Positions 12,302-53,819 of a stretch of DNA of 64,000 nt are shown piece after piece (the stretch's first letter is position 1; every line of letters begins with the position of its first letter). The stretch lies in assembly GCA_937625935.1 (NCBI GenBank), contig OW569363.1, positions 186,001 to 250,000 on the forward strand. Direction: 5' to 3'. Both the position numbers and the translations under genes were made by a program. This DNA comes from Tetramitus jugosus. Taxonomy: Eukaryota > Protista > Heterolobosea. Below the pieces are notes generated by a model. It was given only the letters and a program-made list of their open reading frames with translations. It ran no database searches and was not told the DNA's origin.

Positions 12302-12530
12302 TTTTTTTTTCCATACAACATTTGTGGCAACTTTAAACTAGACAATTGACGGCGGATCGTTGTGCATGGTTACCTGAGCAGGCCACAACGTTTGATGCAA
12401 CGTTACCAAATCAGATGAAGCCAGATCTGTCTCTAACAATTGATTCCATAGGGTGCATAACCAACGGAACCATGAGTGTCTTCCATGCATGCCCATCGAG
12501 TTCTCCTTTTTGCACACCAAAAAATTCGTC
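12302..12530 (-). mobile_element. Probable decayed 3' fragment of a non-LTR retrotransposon upstream of tRNA-Gln
   Basis: Minus strand ends in an A9 tract (12310-12302). Frame-broken translations HAWKTLM and RQIWLHLIW*RC resemble the remnants at 25042-25089 and 32853-33017. No clean TSD found. Confidence 0.4.
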
Positions 12531-12559
12531 AAGGTTTTTACTATTTTTGATAATATGAC

Positions 12560-12630
12560 TCTCCTATGGTCTAGTGGTATGATAGCGGACTTTGAATCCG
12601 TTGACGGTGGTTCGATTCCACCTAGGAGAA
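12560..12630 (+). tRNA. tRNA-Gln (anticodon TTG)
   Basis: Acceptor TCTCCTA/TAGGAGA, anticodon arm GCGGA-CTTTGAA-TCCGT, T arm GGTGG-TTCGATT-CCACC, followed by CTTTT terminator. Confidence 0.93.
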
Positions 12631-12732
12631 CTTTTGCTTTGGTCGCAGCTTCGGAATATTGTTTGGTTTTTTCCACAAGAACAACAAAAAACAAGTTGCA
12701 ATCTACTAATCAAAATTATCCAAAATACTACC

Positions 12733-13236
12733 ATGCTCAGAAATTCCATCAAGTTGTTCCAAATCACCAACAGAAGAACCATCTTCAAGCAATCCACAAT
12801 TGTCAGGTATGCCAAATTCACGAATTCACAACATCAACAACCGCAACCAATGCACATGTGTATGTCTCTAACACTGACACTGGTCGATTTGACATGATTC
12901 CCATTTTTTTTTGTACACACACATGCACACACTACACACAGACACTATGCTGTTGATCACGCTGAACACGCTGCTCCAAGCAGTTACCTCAACAAGGAAG
13001 ATGTCAACGAGCGTATCATCAATGTGTTGAAGAAGCACGACAAGGTTGATGCAAGCAAAGTCACTGACAATTCTCACTTGGTTCAGGATCTAGGTCTCGA
13101 TTCATTGGACACTGCTGAGATTATCAGTGAAATTGAACAAGAATTTGTGATTGAGATTGCCAATGAAGAAGCTTTCAAGTTGCAATCCGTTCCTGAACTC
13201 GTCCAATATATTTCTAGCTCACCTGTTGCCAAGTAA
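12733..13236 (+). CDS. NDUFAB1: Mitochondrial acyl carrier protein (exons 12733-12806, 12942-13236)
   Basis: Presequence MLRNSIKLFQITNRR..., GTATGC...CAG intron, phosphopantetheine motif DLGLDSLD, EIEQEFVIEI. Confidence 0.93.
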
Positions 13237-13407
13237 AGTGAATGATATCAATCACTGTGTTGATCATCAAACATCTCTCTCTTTTGTGTGTGCAACTACA
13301 GTCAGTTGCTTTGAGGGGTTTTCCGGTTCCAACCTAACATAACATAACATAAATAAACAACCAGAAAAAAAAACAACATCCAAACACAAGCAAAAAAAGA
13401 CGTCATT

Positions 13408-14109
13408 ATGAACTTTGATCACAATAATAATAATAAGAACAACAACAATGACAACAATAGCAACAACCATTCAATTGACATTTATCGATACTTGATTGGC
13501 AATTGGAAACGTTGTCTCGAATTTCGTCAATTCGGTGGCCTATTCCAGCACTTGTTCACAACCAACACCATTGTCACTATTGAAGAATTTAATCGATTGC
13601 ATGAAACTACTGCTATGAACAATAACAACAACAATAATAATAATAATAGTAACAATCAAAATGATGGTAATGTACGTTATCTTCGATGGAAATTTGGAAA
13701 GACTGGAAATGGATATGAGATGGCTGTGAGACCAAGTGCCGGTGGTCACAAGAACGCAGCAACTACTAGTCATAGAGGTAATAATAATAATAATAATAGT
13801 GGTAGTGGTGGTAGTAGTAGTGGTAGTGGGATAGGTGGTGGATCACTATTGTCGGCATCTGCTGCTGCTTCATTGGATCGATACTCTGCACAAAAACAAA
13901 CCAAGTTTGAGTGGCAAGTGGCAGGAACGACGTGCGAAGGTTATTATTATCACGAGTCAAAAGTGGCCATTTTCAATTTTATTCTGAGTGTGAGTATTGT
14001 GACGGTGACGTATCGGATTATGGATGAGAATACGATGGCTGTGTCAATTGTGGAGATGGATGACAAGTATCAACCAACGATTCAATATGGAAACATGTAT
14101 CGGTTGTAG
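13408..14109 (+). CDS. Asn-rich hypothetical protein, probable beta-barrel core
   Basis: 233-aa ORF with poly-N/G/S inserts around beta-strand-like blocks (YLIGNWKR, TVTYRIMDENTMAVSIVE, IQYGNMYRL). Confidence 0.7.
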   Translation: MNFDHNNNNKNNNNDNNSNNHSIDIYRYLIGNWKRCLEFRQFGGLFQHLFTTNTIVTIEEFNRLHETTAMNNNNNNNNNNSNNQNDGNVRYLRWKFGKTGNGYEMAVRPSAGGHKNAATTSHRGNNNNNNSGSGGSSSGSGIGGGSLLSASAAASLDRYSAQKQTKFEWQVAGTTCEGYYYHESKVAIFNFILSVSIVTVTYRIMDENTMAVSIVEMDDKYQPTIQYGNMYRL

Positions 14110-14372
14110 ATTGGGAATGAGAAGAAGAAGGCGGCTTTTGTTGGCGTTGCTTTTTGTTTTTGAAGGAGTACTGTAAAGTTGTAAAATATTTGAATGAAAT
14201 TTATTATTGTTGGTGGTGCTTGGTATAATGATGATGGTTGTTTATAAGGGAGACTAAAGTCACTATGGTACAAAAAGTGCCCAGTCAAAACGTGTGTTCC
14301 AGAGGTTTCACATAAATAAAAGGGATGGATGTGTGGTCCTCGATTCAGAGATCGATGAGACGTGCAGCGATT

Positions 14373-15332
14373 TTAGAAGTATCGTTTCAATTGTTCCCAG
14401 AACACAAATGTGAGGACCGTGTGCGGAGCAAGTCTCATGTACTGCGAGAGACCTCCCTTGTAAATGCCTGTGATTCCCTCTGTTTTCAATGTTTTGACCA
14501 AGCAATCTGGAATACTGTTGTACTTTTTGAGTTCTCCAGGTCTCTGGACGTACAATCTCGTGGAAATGACATCAAACGGATGCATGACCAACACTGCAAA
14601 CACACCAGTCACCAAACTGGCCATTAAATGAATCGTAATTGCATCACCTGGTAATTTGGTTGCATTCATCAACGCCTGCTTTGTCGTGTCATACGTGGAC
14701 AATTGAACACTGGATCCCATGGCCACTCTCAACGCAGCAGCACTCACACCAGTGTACAATGACTTGATTCCTCCCGTTCTATAAATATCAGACAAGGCAT
14801 GAAACATGTTCCTATAGACGTATTGTTCACCCACAGCAATTGCATTCGATTGAATTTGCATCCGTGTCTTGATCATGAACAATGGAGATCCCACACTGGC
14901 ACCAATCACACCGGCCGTCGCACCACAAAACAATTTCTTTCCAAATTTCACAATCTGATGATCTTGCTCATTGGTCACCATCGAATTCAACACAGAGTAA
15001 CTACCGAGACGCATACCGTTCATCACAAATTGGTAGGCCATGGCTGGAAAGAGTCCTTTTTGGAGACCGTTGAGACCAAATCCCTCGTTTCGACTAATTT
15101 TGAGAAAAGCATCAGTCAAGCTCTTGTACGGCGTGTTCTCCTTGGTTGCCTGAGCGAGTTCACCTTGTACTTGGAATCGCGATTTGAGAACGTCCATTGG
15201 ATTGGTGAAGATGACGGCTGTCGTAGTTGCCACACCACCCAATAGAAAGTTTTTGGCTTGGCTCATCACGGCAGATGAGTTGTTGTTCGTGTTGGACGCC
15301 TGTGGTGTTGTTGCTGCAGCTGATTGAGACAT
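14373..15332 (-). CDS. OAC1: Mitochondrial carrier (SLC25), oxaloacetate carrier OAC1/SLC25A35-like
   Basis: Three PX[D/E]XX[K/R]XR-type repeats (PMDVLKSR, PLFMIKTR, PFDVISTR); LQKGLFPAMAYQFVMNGMRLG and MGSSVQLSTYD are typical of the OAC1 subfamily. Confidence 0.85.
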   Translation of the reverse strand: MSQSAAATTPQASNTNNNSSAVMSQAKNFLLGGVATTTAVIFTNPMDVLKSRFQVQGELAQATKENTPYKSLTDAFLKISRNEGFGLNGLQKGLFPAMAYQFVMNGMRLGSYSVLNSMVTNEQDHQIVKFGKKLFCGATAGVIGASVGSPLFMIKTRMQIQSNAIAVGEQYVYRNMFHALSDIYRTGGIKSLYTGVSAAALRVAMGSSVQLSTYDTTKQALMNATKLPGDAITIHLMASLVTGVFAVLVMHPFDVISTRLYVQRPGELKKYNSIPDCLVKTLKTEGITGIYKGGLSQYMRLAPHTVLTFVFWEQLKRYF

Positions 15333-15555
15333 TGTGTTTTTGTGATTTTTTGGGCGAAAGATAATGTGAAAAGAAAGTGAACTTTCTTTTTGTCCCCATC
15401 TTATTATGATTGATGACATGACTTTGAATTCCAACATAGAATACGGCAATTATTCTTTGCCCAAGCTGAGGAGCTCTTCAGGATGAACGACGCAAGCAAA
15501 TTTTTTAACTTTTTTGGATGAAAGAGCCGACTTTAAGGATTTAAGATAATATGAA

Positions 15556-15640
15556 GGACATATAGCTCAGCGGTAGAGCATGGGATTGCAAATAATGTAA
15601 TATCATCCTATGGTCGTGTGTTCGATTCACACTATGTCCT
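15556..15640 (+). tRNA. tRNA-Cys (anticodon GCA) with 13-nt intron 15592-15604
   Basis: Acceptor GGACATA/TATGTCC plus U73, D arm GCTC/GAGC, anticodon stem TGGGA/TCCTA, intron at the canonical 37/38 position, T arm GTGTG-TTCGATT-CACAC, T-run downstream. Confidence 0.93.
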
Positions 15641-15753
15641 GTTTTGCTTTTCCTCATTTTTACCGTCGAGTAATTTCTGGATGTTTTTCATCCCTCAAAA
15701 AACGTACTTCACCGCTTCCCGTAACATAAACAATCCAATCGACCCGACGAGAT

Positions 15754-18700
15754 ATGGCGTCACTACCTGATTACATGACCGAGGTGCTCCACACTGCCCT
15801 CAAAACTCAACTCAAAGCTGATATGGGCACCGCTCTACAACAAGTGGACATTGCAAAGCATCTTTACCCTCCGTATCATTCCAGTCCAACCATCACCAAT
15901 GAAGAAAAGGAATTTGCTAGATCAAAGGTCGTCAACAACAACCAGATCAGCGACAACAACAATAACAAGAACAGTAAGATGTTTCTTGTGCTAGAGTTGT
16001 TCGAAGCTGTTTTTCGAATCATCATCAATGAAGAAATGAAGACGACAGGGAGCCGATCGACTAGCAGTGATGAAAAATCGTCATTGTCATCGAGCAGTCG
16101 TTCACACAAGAATGAACTCCAGTTTGCTACTAATCCATTGCAGCTCGTTCGATGGATCACATGCAGTTTTCCATTGTTGTGGTACTCTGGTGCAGTGATC
16201 AAGAGCAATAGAGATTACCATCTTTGTCTCATGAATATGATTCGAATGTTTTGTCTCGTTTTCAAGTATCAAGAACAGTCCAAGCAAGCACTCTTCAGAG
16301 TCATGGTATCAGAGTTGCATGATATGATATGCGATTTGTTTCAAGTGTGGATGCTGATTCAACAGGAGAGAAGTAAGCATGGATCAGCAGCGAATCTACC
16401 TGTTATTTTCATTGATTTGATGCCGAAAACAATCAAGTTACTCGGTTCAGAGTCCTTGGAGATCCAAAAACTGAGAATTACATCTCTGAACCAAGTTTTT
16501 AGATATTTGAATGCAACGATTGACATTTTGTTCGCCCTATCATCATCACACAGTGAGATTATTCCGATTGTGAAGGGAAACGCACTTGAAAGCTCATTTT
16601 TAACAATTGATTTCAACTTGTATGAAACGCTGATACTAGTCATAAAGATGGGCCACTTGACGACAAAACAGGTCGCACTACGTTACTTGAATGAGCTTAT
16701 ACGTATTAACCGGCACTTTGTATGTCCTTCAGATTTAATGGTATCAAACATATTGGATGTCGTGTCACACGAGTTGATCGAACTTATTCTGTTTATTGAC
16801 AATGAGGAGATTGCAACGAATTCTTGGCCAATTTATAGAACGCAAAAATTTGATGATTGCTTCTGTCTGATGATAGAAAATTTGTCATCCCCCCAATTGT
16901 GTACAGACGATTCACTGAGGTTTGTGAATTCATTATCGTGGAATATTGCTCACTCACCATCCACGAAACTATGTAGTTTACTCGTTGAAATGCTATATAC
17001 GAGAGTGTTGATTGAGAAGAATCTGATTACGCTACGAGAAACTCATGATTTAATCATCAAGATATGTCAGAGAAGGTTAATGACTCACGATTTATTACAA
17101 TTTGTTCTGTTTGATTCAATTGCAGTACAGAGCGAAACAACGAGAAACGATGACTCTCCTGTTGAACCATCCACCAAAAAGTTTAAACCATCGACTGAGT
17201 TTACTCTCTTTGGTGTTGATATGGAAGCAACGAAGCAGGATATTCTGCCGTTGTTTGTTGCGATGGAAGATATTGTTTTGAATGCAAATACTGAGTGGAG
17301 AGATTGTGTTGTATTTTTGGAGGTATGCCTCTCTTTTCTAACTAGCCATCCCTACGAGAAGAATGTAGTGAATCCTGATGAGTGTAAAATAATGCGTCGT
17401 ATTGTAGATATTGTCTGTACCGAGAACAAAGATGCACTTCTATTGAACCTGGACTGTGTACTCTCGATGATTAATAACTATTTGAAAGGAATATCAGAAC
17501 CTGGAAGAACTGATTTTTTGGTGACACAGTGGCATAAGCATCTTGTCGGATATTTTACAAACTTGATTACAGCCGACCAATTTGAGGTAGAGACCGAAGA
17601 ATCGATAAGGTTTTATAGAGCAGCTGCCAACTTGATAGTTGCATGTTTTAAGTGTGATCCTTCTGACAATATTTTGGTTCAGTCAATCCAATATTTCGTG
17701 GGAGGCGCACTTATGCATCACAATAAGAAAATTAAGTTAATCGCTCTAGAGCTACTACCACGAGTAATACTGGCGAACCAGAAGTCCCAAGTTAGTGTAG
17801 ATATGAGTGTTGTGCAAGAAGTTAGTTCTATTGTACGAAATATATCACCCGCTACTACTGATGAGAGTTCTATTCAGATTCTAGTTGCAGTTGCCAAGGC
17901 ACTTGGTACGATCTCAGTTCATTTGAAAGATCTGAACAAAAATGTGGTTCATGATTTTATTGATTTGTGCTTTAGGCATTTATTTGTTGGCAAATTGGGC
18001 AACAAGCGCACTGTTCGTGCCTTTATTCAATCACTACCTGAGTTGTATCGGAATACCTCTTCTGATATTTGGCCATCATTCTCGTCAAACTTGAAGGCGG
18101 TGGTCCGCTTATTTACGTCAGTAGGTGATGAAGACTTGCGCCGAATGATCTTGGAATCTCGAATAATTGAGGATTTGTTGAGAGATGATTCAGGCTTATT
18201 TTTAGTACTTGTGTTCCCGAACAATGTAGCTGGCTTTGTGGCATCAATCCAGAGTGAGATGAAAGAGGCTCTAGAGAGTGACAACAAGGATCAATGCATA
18301 TATTTGATGAATATTCTCTCTCGAATTGCGATACCCTTGTCCCATAACGAGGTTCATATTAAGAAGCAATGCATATTCAGTATTTCTAATGCTTTGTGCT
18401 TAGGAGATATCAAGTTACAGGCCTATGCAGTTCAGTATCTTGAAGATATTAGACACAGCCTTCCCAAGAAAGAGATATCCACTGTCCTTCCAATAGGGGA
18501 TGAAATATTCGATGATTGGGTTCTTGAAATATTGAAACAAGTGGATTCCGGAAAGAGAAGTGATATCAAGAAGCGATTGAACAAAATATTTGGTATCGTA
18601 TCGCGTGTTTTATATGACAAATCATCCAGGGAATTTCTGAAATCTTCATTAGTAAGGGTTGTACCAAAGCTCGTGTTTCAAATGCGATCTATCGATATTC

Positions 18701-23577: not shown

Positions 23578-23703
23578 TTACACTCGTTTCAACATACTAG
23601 CATCTTTTAGTAAACATAAAGCTCAGTAAACGCTGCCAATTTTGGTTGGAAATAGTAACTCCATATGTATTTGTTGGATGGAAAGTGACTACAAACCAGC
23701 AAA

Positions 23704-23823
23704 AGCCTACATTACTGAGGGTTCTCGAGTAGTCTCCTATCTCAATACTAACTCAGCCAGATGGTGCTTAACTTCTCTATTCGAAATGGGAAGAGGTGGT
23801 TCCACCATTGTATGAACGTAGAC
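23704..23823 (-). rRNA. 5S rRNA gene (single dispersed copy)
   Basis: Reverse complement GTCTACGTTCATAC...CCCATTTCGAATAGAGAAGTTAAGC...TTAGTA...GGAGAC...GAACC...TGTAGGC TTTT: about 120 nt, terminal helix GTCTAC/GTAGGC, box A AGTTAAGC, oligo-T terminator. Confidence 0.92.
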
Positions 23824-23846
23824 ACTATCTAATAGTAATAGAGCTA

Positions 23847-24839
23847 TTTACGCGTTTTTGGCCGCTTTGGTGACCGCATCTATGACTTTGTTGAGTTGTT
23901 CAACAAAGAGAGGAGGATTGTTCAACAGCACTGCTACACCCAAGCGCAGTGTTGATTGCACAAGAAAGGTGGTCGTCCATGGCATGAAGAACATGTCAGT
24001 GGACGACATCAAGAAGCTACTGGGACAGAAGGTTGCCAGTGTGCTCAAGAAGCGTGACACTGCTTTCGTGGTCATGGGTGATGAAACCTATGCACAAGCA
24101 GTGCTCAGCGGAGAGAACAAGGTAAAGGCCACGGTCACTCGATACGTCGAGAGACCACATGATCCTCTCAAGGCTGTCAACAAGAGGTTGACAAAGATGT
24201 ACGAGGAGCTGCTGACGGTGGTCGACGCACTGCGTCGACAGGTCACAGAACTCACCAAGGATTTGACAAAGACAAAGGGCCAAGAGAGCAACAAACCGGT
24301 TCCGATACCGGTACTGGAAGTTGCACAAAGAACTGCTCCTGATCTAATGGAGGCAGAAGAACAAAGGAGTGCAACACCACTGCCAACAGTGCCTGTTGTA
24401 CTGCTCAGCGCTGAAAATCGGCAAATCCTGGAGCAAGTGAATGCCACTTCTCCAGTGTTTGCAAGAGCGAAGAAGGAAATTGCTGCATTGGCACTAGCCA
24501 GTGCACGCAAAAGGTATGGTTTGACTGAGGACGAACCAGTCATTGTGGATGTGGATGATGACTCCGAAAAGGAGATTCAGAGTCCACAACTCAATGACAA
24601 CAAGAAGAGGAGTGCTAGGATCACACTGGGTGATCTGAGGAGCAACAAGGCCCAAGACAAGAAAAAAACAACAGATGGCTCTGTGTCCATCGACGGTCCT
24701 ACTACAAGGTTACGCTCTTTGATGAAGGGCATCAACCAAAACACTCACAAAACAAGTCAATAAATGAGCAATCGTGTGCTTGCGCATGGAACAAAAAAAA
24801 ACAAAAAAAACAAAAAAAAAATTTTACGCGTTTTTGGCC
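23847..24839 (+). mobile_element. Retroposed non-LTR-type element (body 23864-24822) with 17-bp TSD and poly(A)-like tail
   Basis: Identical direct repeat TTTACGCGTTTTTGGCC at 23847-23863 and 24823-24839. Tail (CA8-10)x3 at 24791-24821 lies directly before the second copy; AATAAA overlaps the ORF stop. Confidence 0.88.
23882..24763 (+). CDS. Element-encoded ORF1-like protein: RRM-like domain, coiled coil, disordered basic tail
   Basis: KVVVHGM-SVDDIKKLLG-VASVLKK-DTAFVVM-DETYAQAVL fits the RRM beta-alpha-beta-beta-alpha pattern, followed by heptads LTKMYEELLTVVDALRRQVTELTKDL. The frame is open from the 5' junction, so it may be 5'-truncated. Confidence 0.65.
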   Translation: MTLLSCSTKRGGLFNSTATPKRSVDCTRKVVVHGMKNMSVDDIKKLLGQKVASVLKKRDTAFVVMGDETYAQAVLSGENKVKATVTRYVERPHDPLKAVNKRLTKMYEELLTVVDALRRQVTELTKDLTKTKGQESNKPVPIPVLEVAQRTAPDLMEAEEQRSATPLPTVPVVLLSAENRQILEQVNATSPVFARAKKEIAALALASARKRYGLTEDEPVIVDVDDDSEKEIQSPQLNDNKKRSARITLGDLRSNKAQDKKKTTDGSVSIDGPTTRLRSLMKGINQNTHKTSQ

Positions 24840-25130
24840 AGTTGGTGCTTCACGGGATGAAGAAGTAGCTGAAAAGAAAGTTACAATATTCGTGAACAGT
24901 GTGAAACGGAGATGTCTCACGACCTCCAGTCTTGAAGACACAAGTGTTAAAACATACAATTTCACGTCACAGGACAACACCTCAAAGATATTTGAGTCCA
25001 GAACTCTTCTGTCAGAGAGACTTCAAACTCTCCATTCACTTTTTGTAAAACAAGTTCTGTACTCTCTCATTTGATCTCGTTGGTTGTTCCAGAATGGGAA
25101 CATGGCAATTTTTCTCAGGTTAAATTGGAA
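24840..25130 (+). mobile_element. Possible older decayed LINE ORF2 3' remnant immediately behind the young element
   Basis: Translation FVKQVLYSLI*SRWLF (25042-25089) aligns without gaps to FECLVVYTLVSNKWLV downstream of the zf-RVT remnant at 32970-33017. Confidence 0.4.
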
Positions 25131-25153
25131 CTGTCCTTGAATACGATGAACGT

Positions 25154-27858
25154 TTACAGTTTATTCAAACAATTCTCAACCTCAATAAAACTAGGACGAT
25201 TTTCAGGCAACGTATCCCAACACTTCTGAATGATGAGCTTTGCTTGATGGTACAGAGAAACACTTTCATCGGACAATTCGGTTTGCTCTGGAAAATCTGG
25301 ACGTTCTCCATCTGTAATTGCATTTACAATGGCAACAGGATAAATTAAATCAGGAAACACTTTTCTGTTGGTGAGCAATTCATAGGCAATCATTCCAAAA
25401 CTAAACACGTCCCCGGCCATATCAGCTTGCACAGTCTTGGTAGAAACAGAGAACTTCTCAGGAGCCATGTACTTAAAGTTACTTCGCAATCTTTGAGTTC
25501 TCCTGCCAACTGTTTTGTTTCGAATCCGCGAAAAGCCAAAGTTTGTAATCTTGACACAATTATTCGAATCACACAAGATAGAATCAGGTTGTAAGTCGCG
25601 ATGCGTAATTGCTGGTTCACGGGTATGCAAGTGATTCATAGCTGTTGCAATTTGTTTGAGTAGTTGTAACCTTTGACCAAAATCCAGATGCTCCACTGCT
25701 AAAAGTCTTTCAATCGTTCCCTTTCCTGCATACTCTGCAAATAAACACAACCGATCTCTCTCAAAACACATTCCCTTAAACTGTAAAATGTTTGAATGGT
25801 GCAAAGATGTTATGATTGAAACCTCGTTCAAAAACTCAGCAAACTCTCCATCTGTCATTGTGTGCTCCTCCAACTCCTTCATAAAGATCCGATTTGTCTT
25901 GTTTTCTAGTTTGTTGTGCACATCAACAATGTATGCCATACCCAACCCATCAAATCCTAACTTCTCAACAATGCTTACATCAGAATAGGCGATAACTCTC
26001 ATGTTAGGAATGATAGAAACTTGTTGTAATCTCTCCATGAAACGTATCTGCTCATAATCCTGACTCGTTTCAAGCACAGCATCAGATTCTAACTCTTCAC
26101 TCAAATCCACAGTGTCTGGCACGACTCTTGGCTCAGTAGAACCCAAATTCTTTAATACTTGTATCCATTTATCTCTCAGAGCATCCGAATCCAAACCAAA
26201 CAAGAGTTTCTCACTCTCGGTAGTCAATTTGAAGAACTCTCCCTTCGCACCCTTTGTAGCTGTCGTGGGAGTGACAAAAAACGAACCAGGAGTAAGCAAG
26301 TACTTTTGCTTCACACTCCATGGATCCTTGATGTTCTTGCAAATATACAAGTAATGATAATCAGTCAGATAAAAATATTCTGTTTGCCAGCTACTGCCAT
26401 TGTTGATCGATCGTCTCATTTGTCCCTCCATGAGAGATCTACCTCTAAACAACACATATGCCTCTGCCTCTATCTCCTGAGCTTTTGAAAGTTTCTTGGA
26501 TACTTTTTGGATGGATACAATGGGATCTGGCTTTCGACTGAGTCCTGACAATAAACGACTAAATATTGCTTTAGGACCGGATAGTTTAACTCCTTTCTGT
26601 GGTAATGACTTTGCCCGCTCAACGGGCCTATTTTCACTCAATTCAACAAATTTAATCACATCGGACATCGAAGGGCGCTTACTTGGGCTGTCGTGCAGCA
26701 TTTTCAGCAGCATTGTTTTGGATCTGTTTGATAAACCAGTTTCTTTGATCCTGTTTTTCACAATATCCAAATAATTAGCGGCAAGAAACACTTCACCAAT
26801 ACTGGTACATAACGTAGCCAAACTAAAGAAGATGACACCCACAGAAAATACTTCACTCCTCTCTGTTACTCTAATCTCAAATTGATTATTCTTCAAGTTC
26901 TTTCGTAATTCAGGAGCAATGTAAGCTAACCCGAGTCAATACCCATTTCGGCAAACCACCCAAACAACACGTTAAGTCAGCTGATACAATTCATGCTCAA
27001 TCAATACGATCATAAATATACTCATATATCTTCAAACATACCATTCTTTAACAACGTTTGCTTCCTGTCCTGATAATACTGTGCATTCACATTGTTCGCA
27101 CAATTACCAGAATCTAAAACAAACTCGGAATAGGACCAATTCGATGCATAGACTCGCTCCATGGAAATCTCTCCCAGTGCATGAACAAAACCATAGGAAT
27201 GCAAATGATGGAGCGCACTAGAAATCATCTTCAACACATCCAACAGCTGCACCTCTTCGAACCAATCGGGTTGTTCTGCCTTTGTAGCTCTCGAAGTTAC
27301 AAACTCACTCAACGAATCAGGATATCTCTGCTTCAACACAAATATACTATTCCTATCGATATAGACCTGATGTATGGGCACGAGAAAATCATGAACAAAT
27401 TCTTGCAGACCCAAGAACATCTCTGAACAAGCAATGGCATCATTTTCACTCTTGAATGTTAGTTTTCTGGCATTGAATCGCTTGTTTGTTTCCTTGTTCG
27501 ATACGAGCCACATGGATTCATTGTGAGGGTGCGTTGTCTGTGTTGTTTTTGTGCTATTCTTGCGATTGTTGTTGGCCGAAGGAGTGCTCGCAAGACTGTG
27601 AAGAACAATGCACTCTGAAAAAGAGTCAACGGCCACCACAGGATGAATGGTGTTGATACTATTGTTGTTGTGTGGTGATTGTTGTGCAGCGACTGCAGCG
27701 TTAGAACTTTGACGAAAGACAAAGTTGGAAGTGTCACCGACAGAGTCAGAACGACGGTTCATGCTCTCATCTTCACTTGCTTCCGTAAGGTTGGTCTTTT
27801 CAAGTTTTTTAATCAGAGTAAAATCCTTTTCAAACGAAGATTGCTTGATGATGTCCAT
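25154..27858 (-). CDS. Tandem (pseudo)kinase - PH - TKL-type (pseudo)kinase protein (exons 27858-27042, 26925-25154)
   Basis: GTATGT...TAG intron restores KNAYIAPEL. PH domain (WQTEYFYLT...LRDKWIQVL). C-terminal TKL fold with HRDLQPDS, NFG, YMAPE, DVFSFG and CW..PENRPSF. Confidence 0.85.
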
Positions 27859-28109
27859 GCTTCTTCAACTCGTTGCAAAGAATGATGGTGTGCTTTCTTG
27901 TTCTTCTGTGTGGTGGAACAAAAGGGCCTCAATGATTTCAAGAGCGCCACTGGGGGTGTGAAGTCCATCAAGTGTCACCACGAATTTCTCCGGGTGTTTC
28001 AACAAACATCAAAATATTGGTCCGGAATGATGATAGGAAGAGAGTTTATTTGGTTCAATTATGATGATTATTCTCATCACCAACGAGAACATTCGAATGA
28101 CGACAAAAG

Positions 28110-28215
28110 CACCAGTTGAGGCACTTCGAAACGAAGGTTTATGGCCCATTCTTTCAACCTTAAATCTTAAACTGTTCGAGTCATAAGCCCTCACTTCGAA
28201 GCGCCACAAGTAGTG
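28110..28215 (-). ncRNA. Candidate pre-miRNA-like hairpin
   Basis: Ungapped 26-bp stem 28120-28145/28180-28205 (minus strand: 4 G-U pairs, 2 mismatches) plus a basal stem, in a non-coding gap of about 830 bp. Confidence 0.4.
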
Positions 28216-28689
28216 TCAATCTAGCACTCGTATGATTCTGTTGCGTGTGGTGTTTGCGAATTTCAGACGTTCCTCGATTTTGTTTTGAGTAGTGGTTGAC
28301 CGCCAAACTCTTCGGGAAAATCACAAAATTGGAATTTCGCGACCTATCCCAACACGAAGTGCGCTGCCATAAGCAGGTTTCAAGGTATATCCTCAAATTC
28401 TCCACGATCATTGACCAAGCATCATGATAACAACAAAATTCATAAAAAAAAAGTCATGTATTGCGTAACCAACGTGATTCACTGACTTCTCACTCGCTCA
28501 CGATCTGGGAGGGTTACTCAATAAAGAATCCAACTCGACGAGTAATTTTCCTTAATGACGTCACATTGTTCGTGTGGGCCTATTCTCCGTAATTTTATCG
28601 GGGTTTTTTTGTGTGTGAAGAGAAAAAAAGAAGCCGCTGCCAGCAACACGCAGAACAAACAACAAACCAACAAACGGAACAACAAAACA

Positions 28690-31600
28690 ATGACTCCCTT
28701 TGGTGATGATGAGGGTAGCAGTGAAGCTCACAATTTTATTCAAATGAATTACACCGCCTCTGCTTCTGTTGCTGGTGATGTTGCAAGACAATCCAACTAT
28801 CATGGTACTTCATCCATCTATGGCTCTCAAGCACTCAGAGATTCTACCAGGGAAAAATTGGGCATTGTTGATTTTTATAGAAACAAGACTTTGTTGTGCA
28901 CGGGTTGCACCGGTTTTTTGGGTAAGGTTCTCGTTGAAAAGCTCTTGAGGTCATTGCCAGAGATTCGTAGAGCTTACATCTTGGTTCGACCAAAGAAGAC
29001 TGGAACAGTGAAGGAGAGAATGACTGAAGAAATTTTGAGATCACCCATTATGGATCTACTGGTGAAGCAGTATGGTGGTGATAGAGAGGCGTTTGAGAGA
29101 TTTGCATTGAGCAAGTTGGTTGCTGTTCCTGGAGATGTCGCCACAGAGGATTTTATTCATTTACCGGAGGAGGAGAAGAATGTTTTGCGCAATGAAATTC
29201 AAGTCGTGATTCATAGTGCTGCGACAGTGGGATTTTCAGAGAGATTGGATGATTCGATTAAGTTGAATGTATATGGATCGTTGCGCGCAATGGAGTTTGC
29301 AAGATCATGTCCAAACATTTGTGTCTTCTCTCAGATTTCAACTGCTTACGTGAACGGTAACATGAAGTCTGGTAGTAGAGTTATGGAGAAGCAATATCCA
29401 CTCAAATTGCCTGGCAATGAGGACCCTGATGATTTTTGTAAGCGTGTTTTGCAAATGAACCCAGCTGAGATTGAAAAAACAACTCAGAAATGTCTGAGTC
29501 ACTTCAAATATCCAAACACATATACCTTTACAAAGAGACTGGCTGAAACTCTCATTACAAAGCGAAGAGGCACATTACCTATTGCAATTATCAGACCAAC
29601 AATTGTCGGTGCGGCAATGAAGGAACCATTCCCAGGATGGGTCGACACAATTTCTGCTGGAGGTTCAGTGTACTTGTTTGTTGGATTGGGAGTTCTCACT
29701 CTGATTCATGGTGATGTCAACAAGGTTTCTGACCAAGTACCTGTTGATTTGGTCGCGAATGCTATGATTGTTTGTACTGCTGATGTCGGTTCATCAAAGA
29801 TGAATGATGTTTGTAGAACATATCACATTGGTACAAGTGTGCCAAGGCCTGGTCGATGGAAGGACACAGTAGAGGGTATCATGAAATATTGGAATTCTCA
29901 TCAACCAACAAAAGCCATTGGTCCTGCTTCTTTCCAAATGATCAATAGTGAATTTTTCTATAATACTCAATTCTTCATGAGATATACGTGGTTGGCCAGA
30001 GTGTATGGAATTGTTGCATCAGCACTTCAAAATAAGAAACACTTGAAGATTGCAAGAGGTCTACAGAAGCTAGAGGACAGAGCCAATATGTTCTCCTCTA
30101 CATTTAAGCACTTTACTTCCAATGAATGGTTCTTTGAGACTGCTAACCTAGAATTGGCATTCTCTCAGTTGCCAGATGATGAAAAGAAGACATTTACTCT
30201 TGATTTCTCTGAGTTGGATTGGAGTACATATTTTGAGTATTTCTGTTACGGACTCCACAAGTTCATCTTGAAGGAGGACCCTGAGCCACCTACAAGACTC
30301 GATGTTTTGCGAAAGAACAAGGCTGATTTCCTCTCGGATCTCACCTTTAGTTTTTCTGCTGCAGGTGAGTTCAACAACAGATGGAGCAGAGAGGATTTGA
30401 AGAATATTGTTCTATCATCGAGTCGTGTTCAACTTGAGATTCAAAAGGAAGCTGAAAGAAAGTCCTTGCCTTACAGGGAGGTTGAGGAGCGTGCACAGTC
30501 GATTATGGAACTTATGTTTGCAAACCCAAAGTCATCAACCGTTCGATTCCTTACATGGGTTTTGCGAAAGATTTGGAGACAAATGTATGCCGCAATTATT
30601 GTCGATTCTCAGGAGTTAGGAAAGATTAAGGACTTGCTCAAGAGTGAATCGGCAGGCTCGGTTGTGTTCATTCCAACGCACAGAAGTTATATTGACTTTT
30701 TGATTTTGTCATATATCTTCTTTGCTTACTCTTTGCCAGTACCTCATGTTGCTGCTGGAGAGGACTTTTTGAACATGTTCCTTGTGAGAGACATGTTCCG
30801 TCACTCAGGTGCGTTCTTCTTGAGACGACAGTTTGGAGATGATAGTCTTTATCGATCTATCTTTACAGAGTATGTCCAACAACTGTTGGTTGATGGATGT
30901 CCGGTTGAATTCTTTGTCGAGGGTACAAGAAGCAGAAATGGAAAGACTTTGCAGCCTAAACTCGGCTTGTTGAACATTATTGCTGAATCATATTTGGAAA
31001 AGAAGGTACCAAATATCACAATTGTACCTGTCAACATCTCCTATGAGCGAATTTTGGAGGGTGAGTCCTATTCTTCCGAACTTCTTGGTGAACCAAAGAC
31101 AAGAGAATCCTTGAGTGGTTTGATTAAGGCACGAGATGTTCTTCGTAATCGCTATGGCGACATTCAGGTAAAGGTTGCAAATCCAATTTCTTTGAAAGAC
31201 TACGTTGCTCAAGCAACAGATGAGATTAGAAATGAAGATGATGGACAGCATTTTGATCCATTTGCAGATACAGGATCCAAGCATAAGCTTATCAGAAAGT
31301 TGGCTTACTCTATCACTCATGAATTGAATCAAGCAGCTGTTATCATGCCTACCAGTTTAGTCGCCACCATCTTACTATCATTTAGGGATGGAATTAGTTT
31401 GGAAGAATTAATCTTGAAGACTACATGGTTGAAGCAACAAATTGTATTGAGAGATGGACGTATCAATTGGGAAGAACAGCAAAGTTCTTCTGCTGTTGTT
31501 GATCGTGCATTGTCTCTTCTCAACAATTTGGTTGTTAAGCGAAGACATATGATCGAACCAGCTATTGAGGCCAAGGCGGATTATAAGAAGACAATTCAAT

Positions 31601-32370
31601 TGAGTTGTTACAGAAATCAATTGATTCACTTATTCGTGAGTGAATCATATGTATCATGTGCGATCGAATCCTTTGGATCCATGAGACATGAGGGTATCAG
31701 CAGAAAAGATTTAATTCAGACTGCCAAGTATATTGCCTCCCTATTCTCGATTGAATTCACGAATAGAATTAATCCAGACCTTCCAGAAGATTTCGATGCC
31801 ATCATCGACACCATGATTGACAGACAAATTATACAGTCAAGAATGGACGAGGATGATCATAAGGAGTTGATTTATGTCCACCAATCAGGTAATAATGAAA
31901 TGCACGCCTTCTTGTGCTCTCTATTGTGGCCATTTGTTGAAAGTTATTGGGCAACAAGCTTCGGTTTGCTTTCTCTGTTGTTCACAGGCACTGAATCAGA
32001 GCATGATAAGAATGGTGTCAAAGAAACCGTTCTATTGCAACGAATTCAATGGTTGGCTGAGAAATTGTACTTTGATGGAAAGATTTACTATTATGAATCA
32101 TGTTCAATGGACACGATCAAGAATGCTGTCTCCACATTCCTCTCCTGGAAGATCTTAAAGCGAGTGAAGAAGGACGAGGAAGTTGGAAAGGGTAAGAAGG
32201 CAACAACTGTTCGAGAGGCTTATCTACAATTGGTTACTCCATACACCGAGATGGACAAGATGTTTGATGTTGTGGAGCAAATTCAGAAAGTGAGAAGAGT
32301 CGCCCTCCACCACAACAAGCCAACGGAGAGAGGGCTATTGCCTGGCATGCACCTCTTATCAAGATTATAA
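28690..32370 (+). CDS. Bifunctional fatty acyl-CoA reductase / DHAP(glycerol-3-P) acyltransferase (FARAT-type), peroxisomal
   Basis: FAR motifs TGCTGFLGKV, PNTYTFTK and IIRPTIV with sterile domain; PlsB/GNPAT motifs PTHRSYIDF, GAFFLRR and FFVEGTRSRNGK; C-terminal PTS1 SRL. Confidence 0.93.
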   Translation: MTPFGDDEGSSEAHNFIQMNYTASASVAGDVARQSNYHGTSSIYGSQALRDSTREKLGIVDFYRNKTLLCTGCTGFLGKVLVEKLLRSLPEIRRAYILVRPKKTGTVKERMTEEILRSPIMDLLVKQYGGDREAFERFALSKLVAVPGDVATEDFIHLPEEEKNVLRNEIQVVIHSAATVGFSERLDDSIKLNVYGSLRAMEFARSCPNICVFSQISTAYVNGNMKSGSRVMEKQYPLKLPGNEDPDDFCKRVLQMNPAEIEKTTQKCLSHFKYPNTYTFTKRLAETLITKRRGTLPIAIIRPTIVGAAMKEPFPGWVDTISAGGSVYLFVGLGVLTLIHGDVNKVSDQVPVDLVANAMIVCTADVGSSKMNDVCRTYHIGTSVPRPGRWKDTVEGIMKYWNSHQPTKAIGPASFQMINSEFFYNTQFFMRYTWLARVYGIVASALQNKKHLKIARGLQKLEDRANMFSSTFKHFTSNEWFFETANLELAFSQLPDDEKKTFTLDFSELDWSTYFEYFCYGLHKFILKEDPEPPTRLDVLRKNKADFLSDLTFSFSAAGEFNNRWSREDLKNIVLSSSRVQLEIQKEAERKSLPYREVEERAQSIMELMFANPKSSTVRFLTWVLRKIWRQMYAAIIVDSQELGKIKDLLKSESAGSVVFIPTHRSYIDFLILSYIFFAYSLPVPHVAAGEDFLNMFLVRDMFRHSGAFFLRRQFGDDSLYRSIFTEYVQQLLVDGCPVEFFVEGTRSRNGKTLQPKLGLLNIIAESYLEKKVPNITIVPVNISYERILEGESYSSELLGEPKTRESLSGLIKARDVLRNRYGDIQVKVANPISLKDYVAQATDEIRNEDDGQHFDPFADTGSKHKLIRKLAYSITHELNQAAVIMPTSLVATILLSFRDGISLEELILKTTWLKQQIVLRDGRINWEEQQSSSAVVDRALSLLNNLVVKRRHMIEPAIEAKADYKKTIQLSCYRNQLIHLFVSESYVSCAIESFGSMRHEGISRKDLIQTAKYIASLFSIEFTNRINPDLPEDFDAIIDTMIDRQIIQSRMDEDDHKELIYVHQSGNNEMHAFLCSLLWPFVESYWATSFGLLSLLFTGTESEHDKNGVKETVLLQRIQWLAEKLYFDGKIYYYESCSMDTIKNAVSTFLSWKILKRVKKDEEVGKGKKATTVREAYLQLVTPYTEMDKMFDVVEQIQKVRRVALHHNKPTERGLLPGMHLLSRL

Positions 32371-32479
32371 TAACACCACAACTAAAAAAATTTCTTTGAA
32401 AGACTTGTCACTTTGTCTGTCCTTTTACCACAGGAATTGGAGGAAAGTGCCCACCACGATGTTGCAGGAGAAACAAAAC

Positions 32480-32552
32480 TGGAGCCACAGGGAATCGAAC
32501 CCTGGACCTCATGCATGCAAAGCACGCGCTCTACCAACTGAGCCATGACCCC
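32480..32552 (-). tRNA. tRNA-Ala (anticodon TGC)
   Basis: GGGGTCA...TGGCTCCA with the G3-U70 identity pair, anticodon arm CGTGC-TTTGCAT-GCATG, T loop TTCGATT, downstream TTTT. Confidence 0.95.
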
Positions 32553-32574
32553 TGATATTCTTGATCCCATCTTT

Positions 32575-33030
32575 GATTTACTGCACGGATTCAAGCATTG
32601 GGAGAAAAAAGTGTTCGTGCCTACCTGAACTGCTGGGCAAACCATGCAAGATAAGGAGTGGAACAACTTTCTCAAGTGCACTTTTGGCCTCGAAAGAAAG
32701 GAAATGTGGTTCTATCATCATTTTAAGTGGAACTCTCCACACAAGAACTGGCCTTCGAATGCTGGATAATTCACTGATAGAGCACTTGCACACACTGTTG
32801 CAAAGCTCCAGAAACCATAGTGCATCTGCTTGTGGAGTGCCAGTTCTATCTGCAGGCATGAAACAATCTCATTTCGGATCAAAACAAAATGTTTTATCTT
32901 TCTTTGTTTCTTTTATTGAAAGCCAAGTAAGTAGGCATATGAGCTTGTTGTCTGGCGACACCCACACATTTTGAGTGTCTAGTAGTGTACACATTAGTTT
33001 CGAACAAATGGTTGGTTGTTCTTCACTTCT
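32575..33030 (+). mobile_element. Decayed non-LTR retrotransposon ORF2 C-terminal fragment (zf-RVT)
   Basis: CTHCCKAPETIVHLLVECQFYLQA* (32787-32861; stop at the conserved Trp position) is the CxxC...ETxxHLLxxC zinc knuckle of L1/Tx1-type RTs. It is preceded in another frame by W-rich KEWNNF...FYHHFKWNSP. Multiple stops and a frameshift. Confidence 0.75.
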
Positions 33031-52994: not shown

Positions 52995-53819
52995 TTAACA
53001 GAATCTGTCTCCATTGAATGCAGATGGAAGGTCCTTTGCCTTGATGAGTTTGATTCCTCTCGATGCCATGTCTGCCTCGGCAGCTGAAATTGTAGAAGGA
53101 GAAATACCAACAGTAGCATCTTCGATAACAAAGGTCTTGTAACCATAGGATGACTTGGAATCAGAAGCAGAGAAGTAAACGCAGTAGTCCAATGCAATAC
53201 CAACGAGGTAAACCTCATCAATGTCGTGTGCAATCAAGATGTTGTTCAAAATAGTCTCATGGAAGTGACCATTGTCAAAGAATGCAGAGTAGGAGTCAAG
53301 GTCGCACTTGAAACCCTTCTGGACAACGACGTCAGTACTCTTCTTGACCAATGAGCCAACAAACTCAGCATCAGTAGTGTTTTGGACACAGTGATCTGGC
53401 CACAAGGTTTGACTCAAAGTAACAGTTTGAGCACCAGTGCAATCAACACCATAGTTGGCCTTTGGAGCCAAATTTGGAGTGATACACAAGTCTCCATTCG
53501 CATTGTACACGAGGTCTCTTGAGGAGAACACTGGATACCCGACATGAGAAGAAGCAAAGGAAGCATGGTTTGGACAATGCCAGTCTTGAGTTCTAACAAC
53601 AAGATCAAAGTGTTGTTCATATCTGTTTCTGATTCTGTTGATGGTTGGAACGATGCCCAATCCACCAGAGACTGCCAATGAACCACCTTCGACGAAACAG
53701 TTTTGAACATCAATCATCAATAGGGCTCTCTTTGGAGAGATACGTTTGGCTTGGGTCAGAGAGCTGGTAAAGCAGACGAGAGCGAGCAATAGAGCTACAA
53801 CAGTAGTTTTGTACATCAT
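52995..53819 (-). CDS. PNC1: Nicotinamidase/pyrazinamidase with signal peptide
   Basis: ALLMIDVQNCF..GGSLAV, TQDWH, LWPDHCVQ, KG...DSYSAFFDN, GIALDYCV; hydrophobic N-terminal signal VVALLLALVCFTSSLTQA. Confidence 0.92.
   Translation of the reverse strand: MMYKTTVVALLLALVCFTSSLTQAKRISPKRALLMIDVQNCFVEGGSLAVSGGLGIVPTINRIRNRYEQHFDLVVRTQDWHCPNHASFASSHVGYPVFSSRDLVYNANGDLCITPNLAPKANYGVDCTGAQTVTLSQTLWPDHCVQNTTDAEFVGSLVKKSTDVVVQKGFKCDLDSYSAFFDNGHFHETILNNILIAHDIDEVYLVGIALDYCVYFSASDSKSSYGYKTFVIEDATVGISPSTISAAEADMASRGIKLIKAKDLPSAFNGDRFC

What the first reader, a model, noticed from the sequence alone, without database searches (positions are those of the whole stretch)
12302..33030. Candidate Pol III gene-targeted non-LTR retrotransposon system (TRE5-like) in a heterolobosean-type genome
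Seen: three of the four Pol III genes in the window (tRNA-Gln, 5S rRNA, tRNA-Ala) have retroelement-like sequence starting about 25-40 bp upstream, always on the opposite strand (5' end facing 5' end). I saw none elsewhere in 64 kb. The remnants share a peptide motif: FECLVVYTLVSNKWLV (32970, in frame 44 codons after the zf-RVT Cys), FVKQVLYSLI*SRWLF (25042) and C*RQIWLHLIW*RCI (12438-12394). Established: Dictyostelium TRE5 LINEs and yeast Ty1/Ty3 integrate just upstream of Pol III genes through contacts with Pol III machinery (TFIIIB for TRE5 and Ty3), a safe-harbour strategy in compact genomes. Inference: this is an independent, possibly undescribed case of position- and orientation-specific targeting in another eukaryotic lineage.
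Basis: partly seen in the sequence, partly recalled or inferred. Interest (0 to 1): 0.92.

Follow-up and report, generated by a model that had tools for sequence, protein, structure and literature searches.

The report
LINEs aimed upstream of tRNA/5S genes
This small amoeboflagellate genome carries jumping genes (LINEs, plus a short version that keeps only their first gene) that insert about 40-45 bases upstream of tRNA and 5S rRNA genes, always head-to-head. This is the geometry known from Dictyostelium TRE5 elements, here in what looks like an unrelated branch of eukaryotes.

Summary
The core observation holds. The window has four Pol III genes, and three carry LINE-derived inserts just upstream on the opposite strand. 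No other LINE sequence was found in the 64 kb.

- **5S gene:** the insert is a 5'-truncated copy of a 1.3-kb, poly(A)-tailed family that encodes ORF1 only. It has a perfect 17-bp target-site duplication.
- **Genome-wide:** this family has at least 40 copies. Of 29 other copies, 18 start 38-51 bp (13 of the 15 at tRNA genes: 42-46 bp) from a tRNA or 5S 5' end, always head-to-head. Nine more sit behind another element's poly(A) tail, as stacked insertions.
- **Full-length elements:** ~5-kb LINEs (ORF1; ORF2 with endonuclease, RT and a CCHC motif) use the same site.
- **Nick position:** the inferred first nick lies about 28 nt from the mature tRNA 5' end and about 23 nt from 5S +1. This fits a tether to TFIIIB or Pol III, which is inferred and not shown.
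- **ORF1:** the protein models as two RRM domains plus a coiled coil. The ORF1-only family evolves under purifying selection (dN/dS 0.26).

The "shared peptide motif" is not a peptide. Most of the tRNA-Gln remnant is a host isochorismatase-gene fragment joined to a LINE 3' end, a chimeric retro-insert.

The best named host match is Naegleria gruberi (64%, one gene). No paper describing this was found. This scan had already found the system on other DNA of this genome (s1-547744, s1-550847).

The parts
12560..12631 (+). tRNA-Gln(UUG), the target gene
   Evidence: ARAGORN and Rfam
12302..12310 (-). poly(A) tail (A9) of the old insert upstream of tRNA-Gln
   Evidence: Read directly from the sequence
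12311..12344 (-). LINE 3' terminus (...GCCACAAATGTTGTATGG)
   Evidence: Together with the adjoining A-run (12302-12344) it is 88-94% identical to the 3' ends of about 13 LINE copies, including the intact C10 element
12375..12496 (-). Sense fragment (CDS nt 342-458) of an isochorismatase-like host gene. It forms the 5' part of a chimeric retro-insert.
   Evidence: 89% identical to the gene at L044:1035-1958(-). A paralog lies in the window at 52995-53819 (Pfam Isochorismatase)..
15555..15641 (+). Intron-containing tRNA with no insertion upstream. ARAGORN calls it Ala(UGC). The canonical register and U73 suggest Cys(GCA).
   Evidence: The stretch to the divergent carrier gene holds no repeat match.
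23704..23823 (-). 5S rRNA gene, the target gene
   Evidence: Rfam RF00001, 100.4 bits
23847..23863 (.). Left copy of the target-site duplication, TTTACGCGTTTTTGGCC
   Evidence: Identical 17-mer on both sides of the insert. It starts 23 nt from the 5S 5' end.
23864..24821 (+). 5'-truncated copy of the 1.3-kb ORF1-only element. It lacks about 265 nt at the 5' end, has a 78-bp deletion at 24748/24749 and a 12-nt deletion at the 3' terminus, and carries an A-rich tail at 24793-24821.
   Evidence: 90-98% identical to at least 40 genomic copies. 93% protein identity to the intact 382-aa ORF1. Reads from other copies continue with the missing 78 bp at 24748.
24823..24839 (.). Right copy of the target-site duplication
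24840..25095 (+). Older, degenerate LINE tail (end of ORF2 plus 3' UTR) pushed outward by the newer insertion. The 3' boundary is approximate.
   Evidence: 24842-24928 is 79-85% identical to at least 20 copies of the ORF2 C-terminal end
32480..32552 (-). tRNA-Ala(UGC), the target gene
32597..33020 (+). Old 5'-truncated LINE fragment covering the ORF2 C-terminal region and 3' UTR. It has frameshifts, stop codons and an internal deletion. The CCHC motif lies at 32787-32840. The boundaries are approximate.
   Evidence: DNA match at 32646-32840. Protein match to ORF2 residues 1116-1180. The 3' terminus resembles LINE ends at about 32980-33015.

Best explanation
The genome holds a group of endonuclease-type LINEs. 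They are about 5 kb long. ORF1 encodes two RRM-like domains plus a coiled coil. ORF2 encodes an AP-endonuclease, a reverse transcriptase and a CCHC motif. The ORF1 stop and ORF2 start overlap as ATGA. There is also an abundant 1.3-kb derivative that keeps only ORF1.

All of them integrate by target-primed reverse transcription at one fixed place upstream of Pol III-transcribed genes. The first nick falls about 28 nt upstream of the mature tRNA 5' end and about 23 nt upstream of 5S +1. The second nick falls 12-17 bp further out. The element's 5' end therefore faces the gene at 42-46 bp (tRNA) or 38-40 bp (5S).

Inferred, not shown:
- The pre-integration complex is tethered to TFIIIB or the Pol III initiation complex, probably through ORF1p as in TRE5-A. 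This is the only component that tRNA and 5S promoters share at that position.
- The ORF1-only element supplies its own ORF1p in cis and borrows ORF2p. ORF2p would recognise a 3'-terminal hairpin and UUGUAU(GG/U)-A(n) end that all families share.

Repeated hits at the same site make stacks. The window shows one recent insertion and three old ones, including a template-switch chimera with a host mRNA fragment.
For: Shown:
- **Copy number and ends.** The short element has at least 40 copies at 90-98% identity. TSDs and poly(A) tails are readable in nearly every copy.
- **Association with Pol III genes.** A tRNA (Asn, Arg, Thr, Asp, Val, Lys, Met, Gln, Gly) or 5S gene lies head-to-head at a fixed distance in 18 of 29 non-window copies, and 9 more are stacked behind another element's poly(A).
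- **Tight geometry**, with p about 1e-54.
- **Independent coordinate test.** 19 of 23 element-gene pairs are upstream and head-to-head.
- **An intact LINE.** On C10 it sits 43 bp from tRNA-Ser with a 12-bp TSD and carries RVT_1, APE and zf-RVT.
- **Likely active copies.** 15 RT hits lie in open frames of at least 1100 aa.
- **ORF1.** ORF1 of the short element is homologous to LINE ORF1 (E 2e-36). It is intact in 22 of 30 copies. dN/dS is 0.26. The model shows tandem RRMs plus a helix.
- **Shared 3' end** across at least 4 UTR families.
- **Independent assembly.** A metagenome contig shows a 97% ORF1 copy about 44 bp from a tRNA.

Precedent for each inferred step comes from TRE5-A and TRE5-A.2 (PMC3159450; PMC5911963).
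Against: - No binding or integration experiment exists, and the TFIIIB tether rests on geometry and analogy.
- The host's TFIIIB genes could not be fetched, so no complex was modelled.
- The parent LINE with the same UTRs as the ORF1-only family was not identified.
The lower bound is about 20%; in the window it is 3 of 4.
- No empty-site allele was seen in the reads, so recent mobility is inferred only from intact TSDs, intact ORFs and high identity.
Confidence: 0.85

Rival explanations
1. The endonuclease itself recognises a DNA sequence that lies upstream of Pol III genes, with no protein tether.
For: There is a weak T-rich/A preference at the inferred nick: T at -4 to -1 and A at position 0.
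Against: TSDs and their flanks are otherwise unrelated among 17 sites. The site keeps a fixed distance from two promoter types, tRNA and 5S. The 5-nt offset between them fits measurement from the transcription start, not from a shared motif. The A at position 0 is partly an artefact of the ambiguity between poly(A) and the TSD.
Confidence: 0.08
2. The elements share ancestry with dictyostelid TRE5, through old inheritance or horizontal transfer, so the targeting did not evolve independently.
For: The geometry is the same, including the shorter distance at 5S: TRE5 uses 40-54 bp at tRNA and 37-41 bp at 5S. Both have two ORFs, APE-RT-CCHC, and an ORF1-only trans-mobilised derivative.
Against: Outside a small group of unnamed near relatives, the closest RTs are animal LINEs at 34% identity or less. 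None of the 20 best representatives looked up is dictyostelid. The host groups with Naegleria, not with Amoebozoa. No TRE5 sequence was available here for a tree.
Confidence: 0.15
3. Insertions are random, and only copies in harmless places next to Pol III genes survive selection.
For: The genome is gene-dense, so selection against genic insertions must be strong.
Against: Selection cannot produce a window of about 5 bp, a single orientation, and the same picture in the youngest copies (98-99% identity, perfect TSDs)..
Confidence: 0.02
4. The tRNA or 5S gene is part of the repeat, as a composite element or a segmental duplication.
For: None beyond the physical adjacency.
Against: The neighbours are at least 12 different tRNA species and 5S. 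The homology between copies starts only after the TSD, and the TSDs flank the element alone.
Confidence: 0.01

Closest known systems
TRE5-A / TRE5-B / TRE5-C (Dictyostelium discoideum, L1-clade LINEs)
   Same: They insert 40-54 bp upstream of tRNA genes and 37-41 bp upstream of 5S, head-to-head. They have two ORFs with APE-RT-zinc finger. The 3' end is structured and essential. They form stacks at tRNA genes.
   Different: The host is a Naegleria-like amoeboflagellate, not an amoebozoan. ORF2 has no close dictyostelid relative among the best database hits. The 5' UTR is only about 30 nt, with no A/B/C modules. ORF1p has two RRM-like domains plus a coiled coil. An ORF1p-TFIIIB contact has not been tested here.
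TRE5-A.2 (non-autonomous AB-ORF1-BC derivative)
   Same: It keeps ORF1 and both ends and lacks ORF2. It is abundant and uses the same target site. Conservation of the ORF1 sequence fits a cis requirement.
   Different: Here the derivative is a diverged family of its own: ORF1 is 33-77% identical to the LINE ORF1s seen. No parent with matching UTRs was found, and trans-mobilisation is inferred.
NLTR-B (Polysphondylium pallidum)
   Same: [quoted passage not shown]
   Different: It is a single-ORF element in a dictyostelid.
HAL1 (half-L1) elements of mammals
   Same: ORF1-only non-autonomous LINE derivatives that depend on ORF2p from autonomous elements (from general knowledge, not checked in a paper here).
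   Different: They have no target specificity, and their ORF1 architecture differs (coiled coil-RRM-CTD).
Ty3 (yeast LTR retrotransposon)
   Same: It uses TFIIIB-bound Pol III start sites as a safe harbour.
   Different: It integrates through an integrase at the start site itself and is an LTR element.

Membership tests
TRE5-type Pol III-upstream-targeting LINE (functional class) | Insertion in a narrow window about 40-54 bp upstream of the mature tRNA coding sequence | tested here: met
   The element's first nt lies 42-46 bp from the tRNA 5' end in 13 of 15 direct cases and 43 bp for the intact C10 LINE.
TRE5-type Pol III-upstream-targeting LINE (functional class) | 5S rRNA genes are also targeted, at a slightly shorter distance (37-41 bp) | tested here: met
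   38, 39 and 40 bp at three 5S genes (L019, L003, window). Further 5S-adjacent copies appear.
TRE5-type Pol III-upstream-targeting LINE (functional class) | Fixed orientation, with the element's 5' end facing the gene's 5' end | tested here: met
   All adjacent cases. 19 of 23 coordinate pairs, with the exceptions explained by other nearby Pol III genes.
TRE5-type Pol III-upstream-targeting LINE (functional class) | Hallmarks of target-primed reverse transcription: poly(A) tail, variable 5' truncation, target-site duplication | tested here: met
TRE5-type Pol III-upstream-targeting LINE (functional class) | ORF1 protein binds TFIIIB subunits, and targeting needs a functional B-box / TFIIIC | not testable with these tools
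   This needs two-hybrid, pull-down or TRE-trap type assays.
TRE clade of dictyostelid LINEs (phylogenetic membership) | The RT groups with TRE5/TRE3 in a tree | tested here: inconclusive
   No TRE sequence was available. The nearest named RTs are animal LINEs at 34% identity or less, and none of the 20 best looked up is dictyostelid.
L1-clade LINE | AP-endonuclease, RT and a C-terminal CX2CX8HX4C motif in ORF2 | tested here: met
   RVT_1 1.5e-27. Exo_endo_phos and Exo_endo_phos_2 weak. zf-RVT 1.5e-4, below the cut-off. The motif reads CVHCGSAPETITHLLVEC.
L1-clade LINE | ORF1p of the L1 type (Transposase_22: coiled coil, RRM, CTD) | tested here: not met
   No Pfam Transposase_22 hit. The model has RRM-RRM-coiled coil in a different order.
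ORF1-only non-autonomous LINE derivative (TRE5-A.2 / HAL1 type) | Encodes ORF1 only, the ORF is kept intact under selection, and the 3' end is shared with autonomous elements | tested here: met
   The 382-aa ORF is intact in 22 of 30 copies. dN/dS is 0.26. It carries the terminal hairpin and TTGTATGG-A(n) end as in the LINEs. Dependence on ORF2p in trans was not tested.

The most novel reading that the evidence does not exclude
TRE5-type targeting (first nick about 23 nt upstream of the Pol III start site, head-to-head, at both tRNA and 5S genes) arose independently in a heterolobosean (Discoba). It would use a structurally different ORF1p, with two RRMs plus a coiled coil, as the adaptor to TFIIIB. 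An ORF1-only parasite of the system also arose in parallel, mirroring TRE5-A.2. With a 5' UTR of only about 30 nt, the elements may also rely on the open chromatin of the Pol III upstream region for their own transcription.
Probability: 0.55. Interest if true: 0.8.

Novelty: new variant of a known kind. Interest (0 to 1): 0.7.

Why it matters
In the papers searched, Pol III-gene targeting by LINEs is documented only in dictyostelid amoebae. A second system with the same geometry in a distant lineage would show that the TFIIIB-bound region upstream of Pol III genes is a repeatedly discovered safe harbour in compact genomes.

It would also give an independent pair of proteins (ORF1p and TFIIIB) for working out how a target-primed retrotransposon is steered. 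That question bears on programmable LINE-based insertion. The abundant, still-coding ORF1-only family offers a natural test of ORF1 cis preference.

Tried and rejected
- **More genome sequence.** No full census or RT tree of the genome's own families was possible.
- **Empty-site allele.** Reads from four runs showed no joint skipping 23864-24822, because contigs break at the repeat. This says nothing either way.
- **3' end structure.** RNAalifold on thirteen 3' ends gave no consensus structure because MAFFT misaligned the variable loops. The hairpin CAAC(C)-loop-(G)GTTG was read by eye only, with one compensatory C-G to U-A change in L015.
- **Host identity.** The Atlas search with calreticulin gave no useful taxa. 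The mitochondrial carrier gave Acanthamoeba and fungi at about 46% and no Naegleria, so it was uninformative.
- **Related LINE contigs.** L058-L060 from other assemblies are too short to reach a tRNA. One contig had no DNA on file.
- **TSDs of the old remnants.** None could be found for the Gln and Ala remnants.
Rejected.
Full report
**Observation.** ARAGORN and Rfam agree on four Pol III genes in the window:
- tRNA-Gln(UUG) at 12560-12631(+)
- an intron-containing tRNA at 15555-15641(+)
- 5S rRNA at 23704-23823(-)
- tRNA-Ala(UGC) at 32480-32552(-)

The window is gene-dense and about 41% G+C.

**The 5S locus.** Directly upstream of the 5S gene, on the opposite strand, lies an insert at 23864-24821. 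It carries a long ORF, ends in an A-rich tail (24793-24821), and is flanked by a perfect 17-bp direct repeat, TTTACGCGTTTTTGGCC, at 23847-23863 and 24823-24839. That is the signature of target-primed reverse transcription.

A search of the window's own 26.35-Mb assembly found at least 40 further copies at 90-98% identity. Aligning 29 of them with 1.5-kb flanks gives these features:
- The full element is about 1.3 kb.
- It begins (A)nACGCAGAAAAAAACGGAATCACATG.
- It encodes one 382-aa ORF, intact in 22 of 30 copies.
- It ends ...GGTTGTATGGAAC(A)n.

The window copy is dead. It lacks about 265 nt at the 5' end, including the start codon. It also has a 78-bp deletion at 24748/24749 and a 12-nt deletion at the 3' terminus. 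Reads from other copies continue with the missing 78 bp at exactly that point.

**Targeting, shown from the copies.**
- In 18 of the 29 non-window copies, a tRNA (Asn, Arg, Thr, Asp, Val, Lys, Met, Gln, Gly) or a 5S gene sits at a fixed distance on the opposite strand.
- In 9 more, the element is preceded at once by another element's poly(A) tail, a stack. A tRNA is visible beyond that element wherever the flank reaches it (L002, L009, L025, L029).
- TSDs of 12-17 bp are readable in nearly every copy.
- At tRNA genes the TSD starts 26-30 nt from the mature 5' end, and the element's first base lies 42-46 bp away. At the three 5S genes the figures are 21-24 nt and 38-40 bp.
- Even if the genome held 2000 Pol III genes, 18 of 29 insertions in a 10-bp oriented window has p about 1e-54.

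An independent test used only coordinates from capped genome searches: 74 RT hits, 41 short-element hits, 51 other LINE pieces, 53 nuclear tRNAs and 47 5S genes. Of 23 element-gene pairs within 6 kb, 19 were in the single configuration "upstream of the gene, head-to-head" (p about 1e-8). Two of the four exceptions are accounted for by another Pol III gene that holds the canonical position; the other two were not examined.

An environmental metagenome contig (L061) carries a 97% ORF1 copy that starts about 44 bp from the 5' end of a tRNA, head-to-head.

**The autonomous elements.** The assembly has at least 74 RVT_1 matches, 15 of them in open frames of at least 1100 aa. One complete element was read (C10; L057 plus L047):
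- tRNA-Ser(CGA), then 43 bp that include a 12-bp TSD (CATGCGCTTTGC)
- an element of about 5 kb with ORF1 (345 aa from its ATG) and ORF2 (1299-aa open frame)
- a poly(A) tail followed by the second TSD copy
- after that, an older truncated LINE

ORF2 has RVT_1 (1.5e-27), weak AP-endonuclease matches and a zf-RVT-like CX2CX8HX4C motif. The ORF1 stop and ORF2 start overlap as ATGA.

At least four families with different 3' UTRs all end AATAAA...(G)CAAC(C)-loop-(G)GTTGTAT(GG/T)-A(n). The short stem is kept despite loops of 3 to about 25 nt, with one compensatory change (read by eye, since RNAalifold gave nothing). The short element shares this terminus.

**ORF1.**
- The short element's ORF is homologous to LINE ORF1: 33% identity over 196 aa, E 2e-36. 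Other ORF1 variants in the loci are 45-91% identical.
- Among 22 intact copies, dN/dS is 0.26, so the protein has been under purifying selection while the family spread.
- An AlphaFold model built from a shallow 9-sequence alignment has pLDDT 75-87 over residues 30-175. It shows two beta-alpha-beta-beta-alpha-beta units followed by a helix at 181-218 and a disordered tail.
- Foldseek matches tandem-RRM proteins (DND1, nucleolin, HuD, Sxl) and the RRM-RRM-coiled-coil proteins NONO and SFPQ, with E down to 4e-6.
- Pfam finds no L1 ORF1 domain.
- A related LINE on another metagenome contig has a homologous ORF1 (23% identity, E 2e-21).

**The other two window remnants.**

*Upstream of tRNA-Ala.* 32646-32840 matches at least 20 LINE copies at 70-90% identity (80-90% for the ten best). 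It also matches ORF2 residues 1116-1180 at 62-67% protein identity, with frameshifts and stop codons. The CCHC motif lies at 32787-32840. Homology begins about 45 bp from the tRNA. A decayed LINE terminus is recognisable near 32980-33015.

*Upstream of tRNA-Gln.* Only 12311-12344 plus A9 (12302-12310) is LINE sequence, on the minus strand. Together with the A-run (12302-12344) it is 88-94% identical to LINE 3' ends. It is 89% identical to a gene on contig 46, and a paralog lies in the window at 52995-53819.

Read on the minus strand, the layout is: tRNA 5' end, 63 nt, host-mRNA fragment, 30 nt, LINE 3' end, poly(A). It is best read as a chimeric retro-insert made by template switching. That reading is an inference. 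Neither old remnant keeps a recognisable TSD.

*Elsewhere in the window.* The older piece behind the 5S insert (24842-24928) is the end of ORF2. No other LINE sequence was found in the window. The fourth Pol III gene has no insert upstream. It shares a short divergent intergenic region with a mitochondrial-carrier gene.

**Mechanism.**

Shown: poly(A), TSDs, 5' truncation, fixed distance and fixed orientation.

Inferred from the TSD positions: the priming nick is on the strand that carries the gene's sense sequence. It lies about 28 nt before the mature tRNA end and about 23 nt before 5S +1. The second nick lies 12-17 bp further upstream.

tRNA genes and 5S genes use different internal promoters and assembly factors. 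They share TFIIIB and Pol III at this upstream position. The 5-nt offset between them is what a short tRNA leader would give. The complex is therefore most likely positioned by TFIIIB or Pol III rather than by DNA sequence. The sites share only a weak T/A preference.

By analogy with TRE5-A, ORF1p is the likeliest adaptor. In that system:
- ORF1p binds TFIIIB subunits.
- ORF1p acts preferentially in cis.
- The 3' C-module is essential.
- The ORF1-only TRE5-A.2 is mobilised in trans (PMC3159450).

None of this was tested here.

**Host and novelty.**
- The window encodes a CFAP58 flagellar protein, so the host is not a dictyostelid.
- Its threonyl-tRNA synthetase best matches Naegleria gruberi among named proteins: 64%, against 53-58% for oomycetes, plants, Acrasis, Willaertia and Amoebozoa. 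It shares the TGS-less architecture of the heterolobosean entries. This is one gene, so the host assignment is moderate evidence.
- ORF2's only close relatives are unnamed: 47-48% identity on a 3-kb contig of assembly GCA_037189345.1, plus metagenome fragments. The next named hits are arthropod and fish LINEs at 34% identity or less. None of the 20 best representatives looked up is dictyostelid.
- Reviews list Pol III-targeted LINEs only from dictyostelids and note their absence from other amoebozoans (PMC5006619; PMC5911963).
- Searches for Naegleria or Heterolobosea combined with tRNA-targeting LINEs found nothing. A 2026 survey of heterolobosean transposons does not mention tRNA. Repbase could not be searched.

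This scan had already reported the same system from other parts of this genome (s1-547744, s1-550847). My tests agree with those reports. They add the ORF1-only family, the 5S/tRNA offset, the ORF1p fold, the shared 3' terminus and the chimeric insert.

**Reads.** In DNA metagenomes that hold this organism or a near relative, the element region is about 30-240 times deeper than its flanks, consistent with tens to hundreds of copies. Element contigs also occur in a soil metatranscriptome, which is weak evidence of transcription.

**Limits.**
- There is therefore no complete census, no tree of the genome's LINE families and no TFIIIB sequences.

Noticed in passing
window 15555-15641: ARAGORN calls this intron-containing tRNA Ala(UGC), and calls a 94%-identical copy in L041 Leu(CAA). 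In the canonical register (start at 15556, U8-A9, D-arm GCTC...GAGC) the anticodon reads GCA and the discriminator is U, which fits tRNA-Cys with a 13-14-nt intron.
   Followed up: partly
whole assembly: 5S rRNA genes are dispersed as single copies. At least 47 near-identical copies lie on more than 25 contigs, not in tandem arrays. This gives the elements many extra targets.
   Followed up: no
contigs C54 and C56: Two contigs carry tRNAs at identical coordinates with identical scores. They are probably the same (organellar?) sequence assembled twice.
   Followed up: no
L005:2872-3819, L022:2795-3745, L027:2604-3554, L009:241-1089: A second ORF1 family (45-50% identical to the 382-aa ORF1, ending ...KKRMNPVA) recurs in several stacks. 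It may be another ORF1-only lineage or the ORF1 of a different LINE family.
   Followed up: partly
L057:2599-2602: The ORF1 stop and ORF2 start overlap as ATGA in the intact LINE, which suggests termination-reinitiation coupling.
   Followed up: partly
L036 (C18:366050-369248) and C20:343501-343740: Pol III genes themselves cluster: tRNA-Met lies next to 5S, and tRNA-Gln lies tail-to-tail with 5S. This explains some apparent exceptions in the orientation test.
   Followed up: partly
window 2376-4499: The ORF has a CFAP58 central coiled-coil domain (flagellar protein), showing that the host builds flagella.
   Followed up: no
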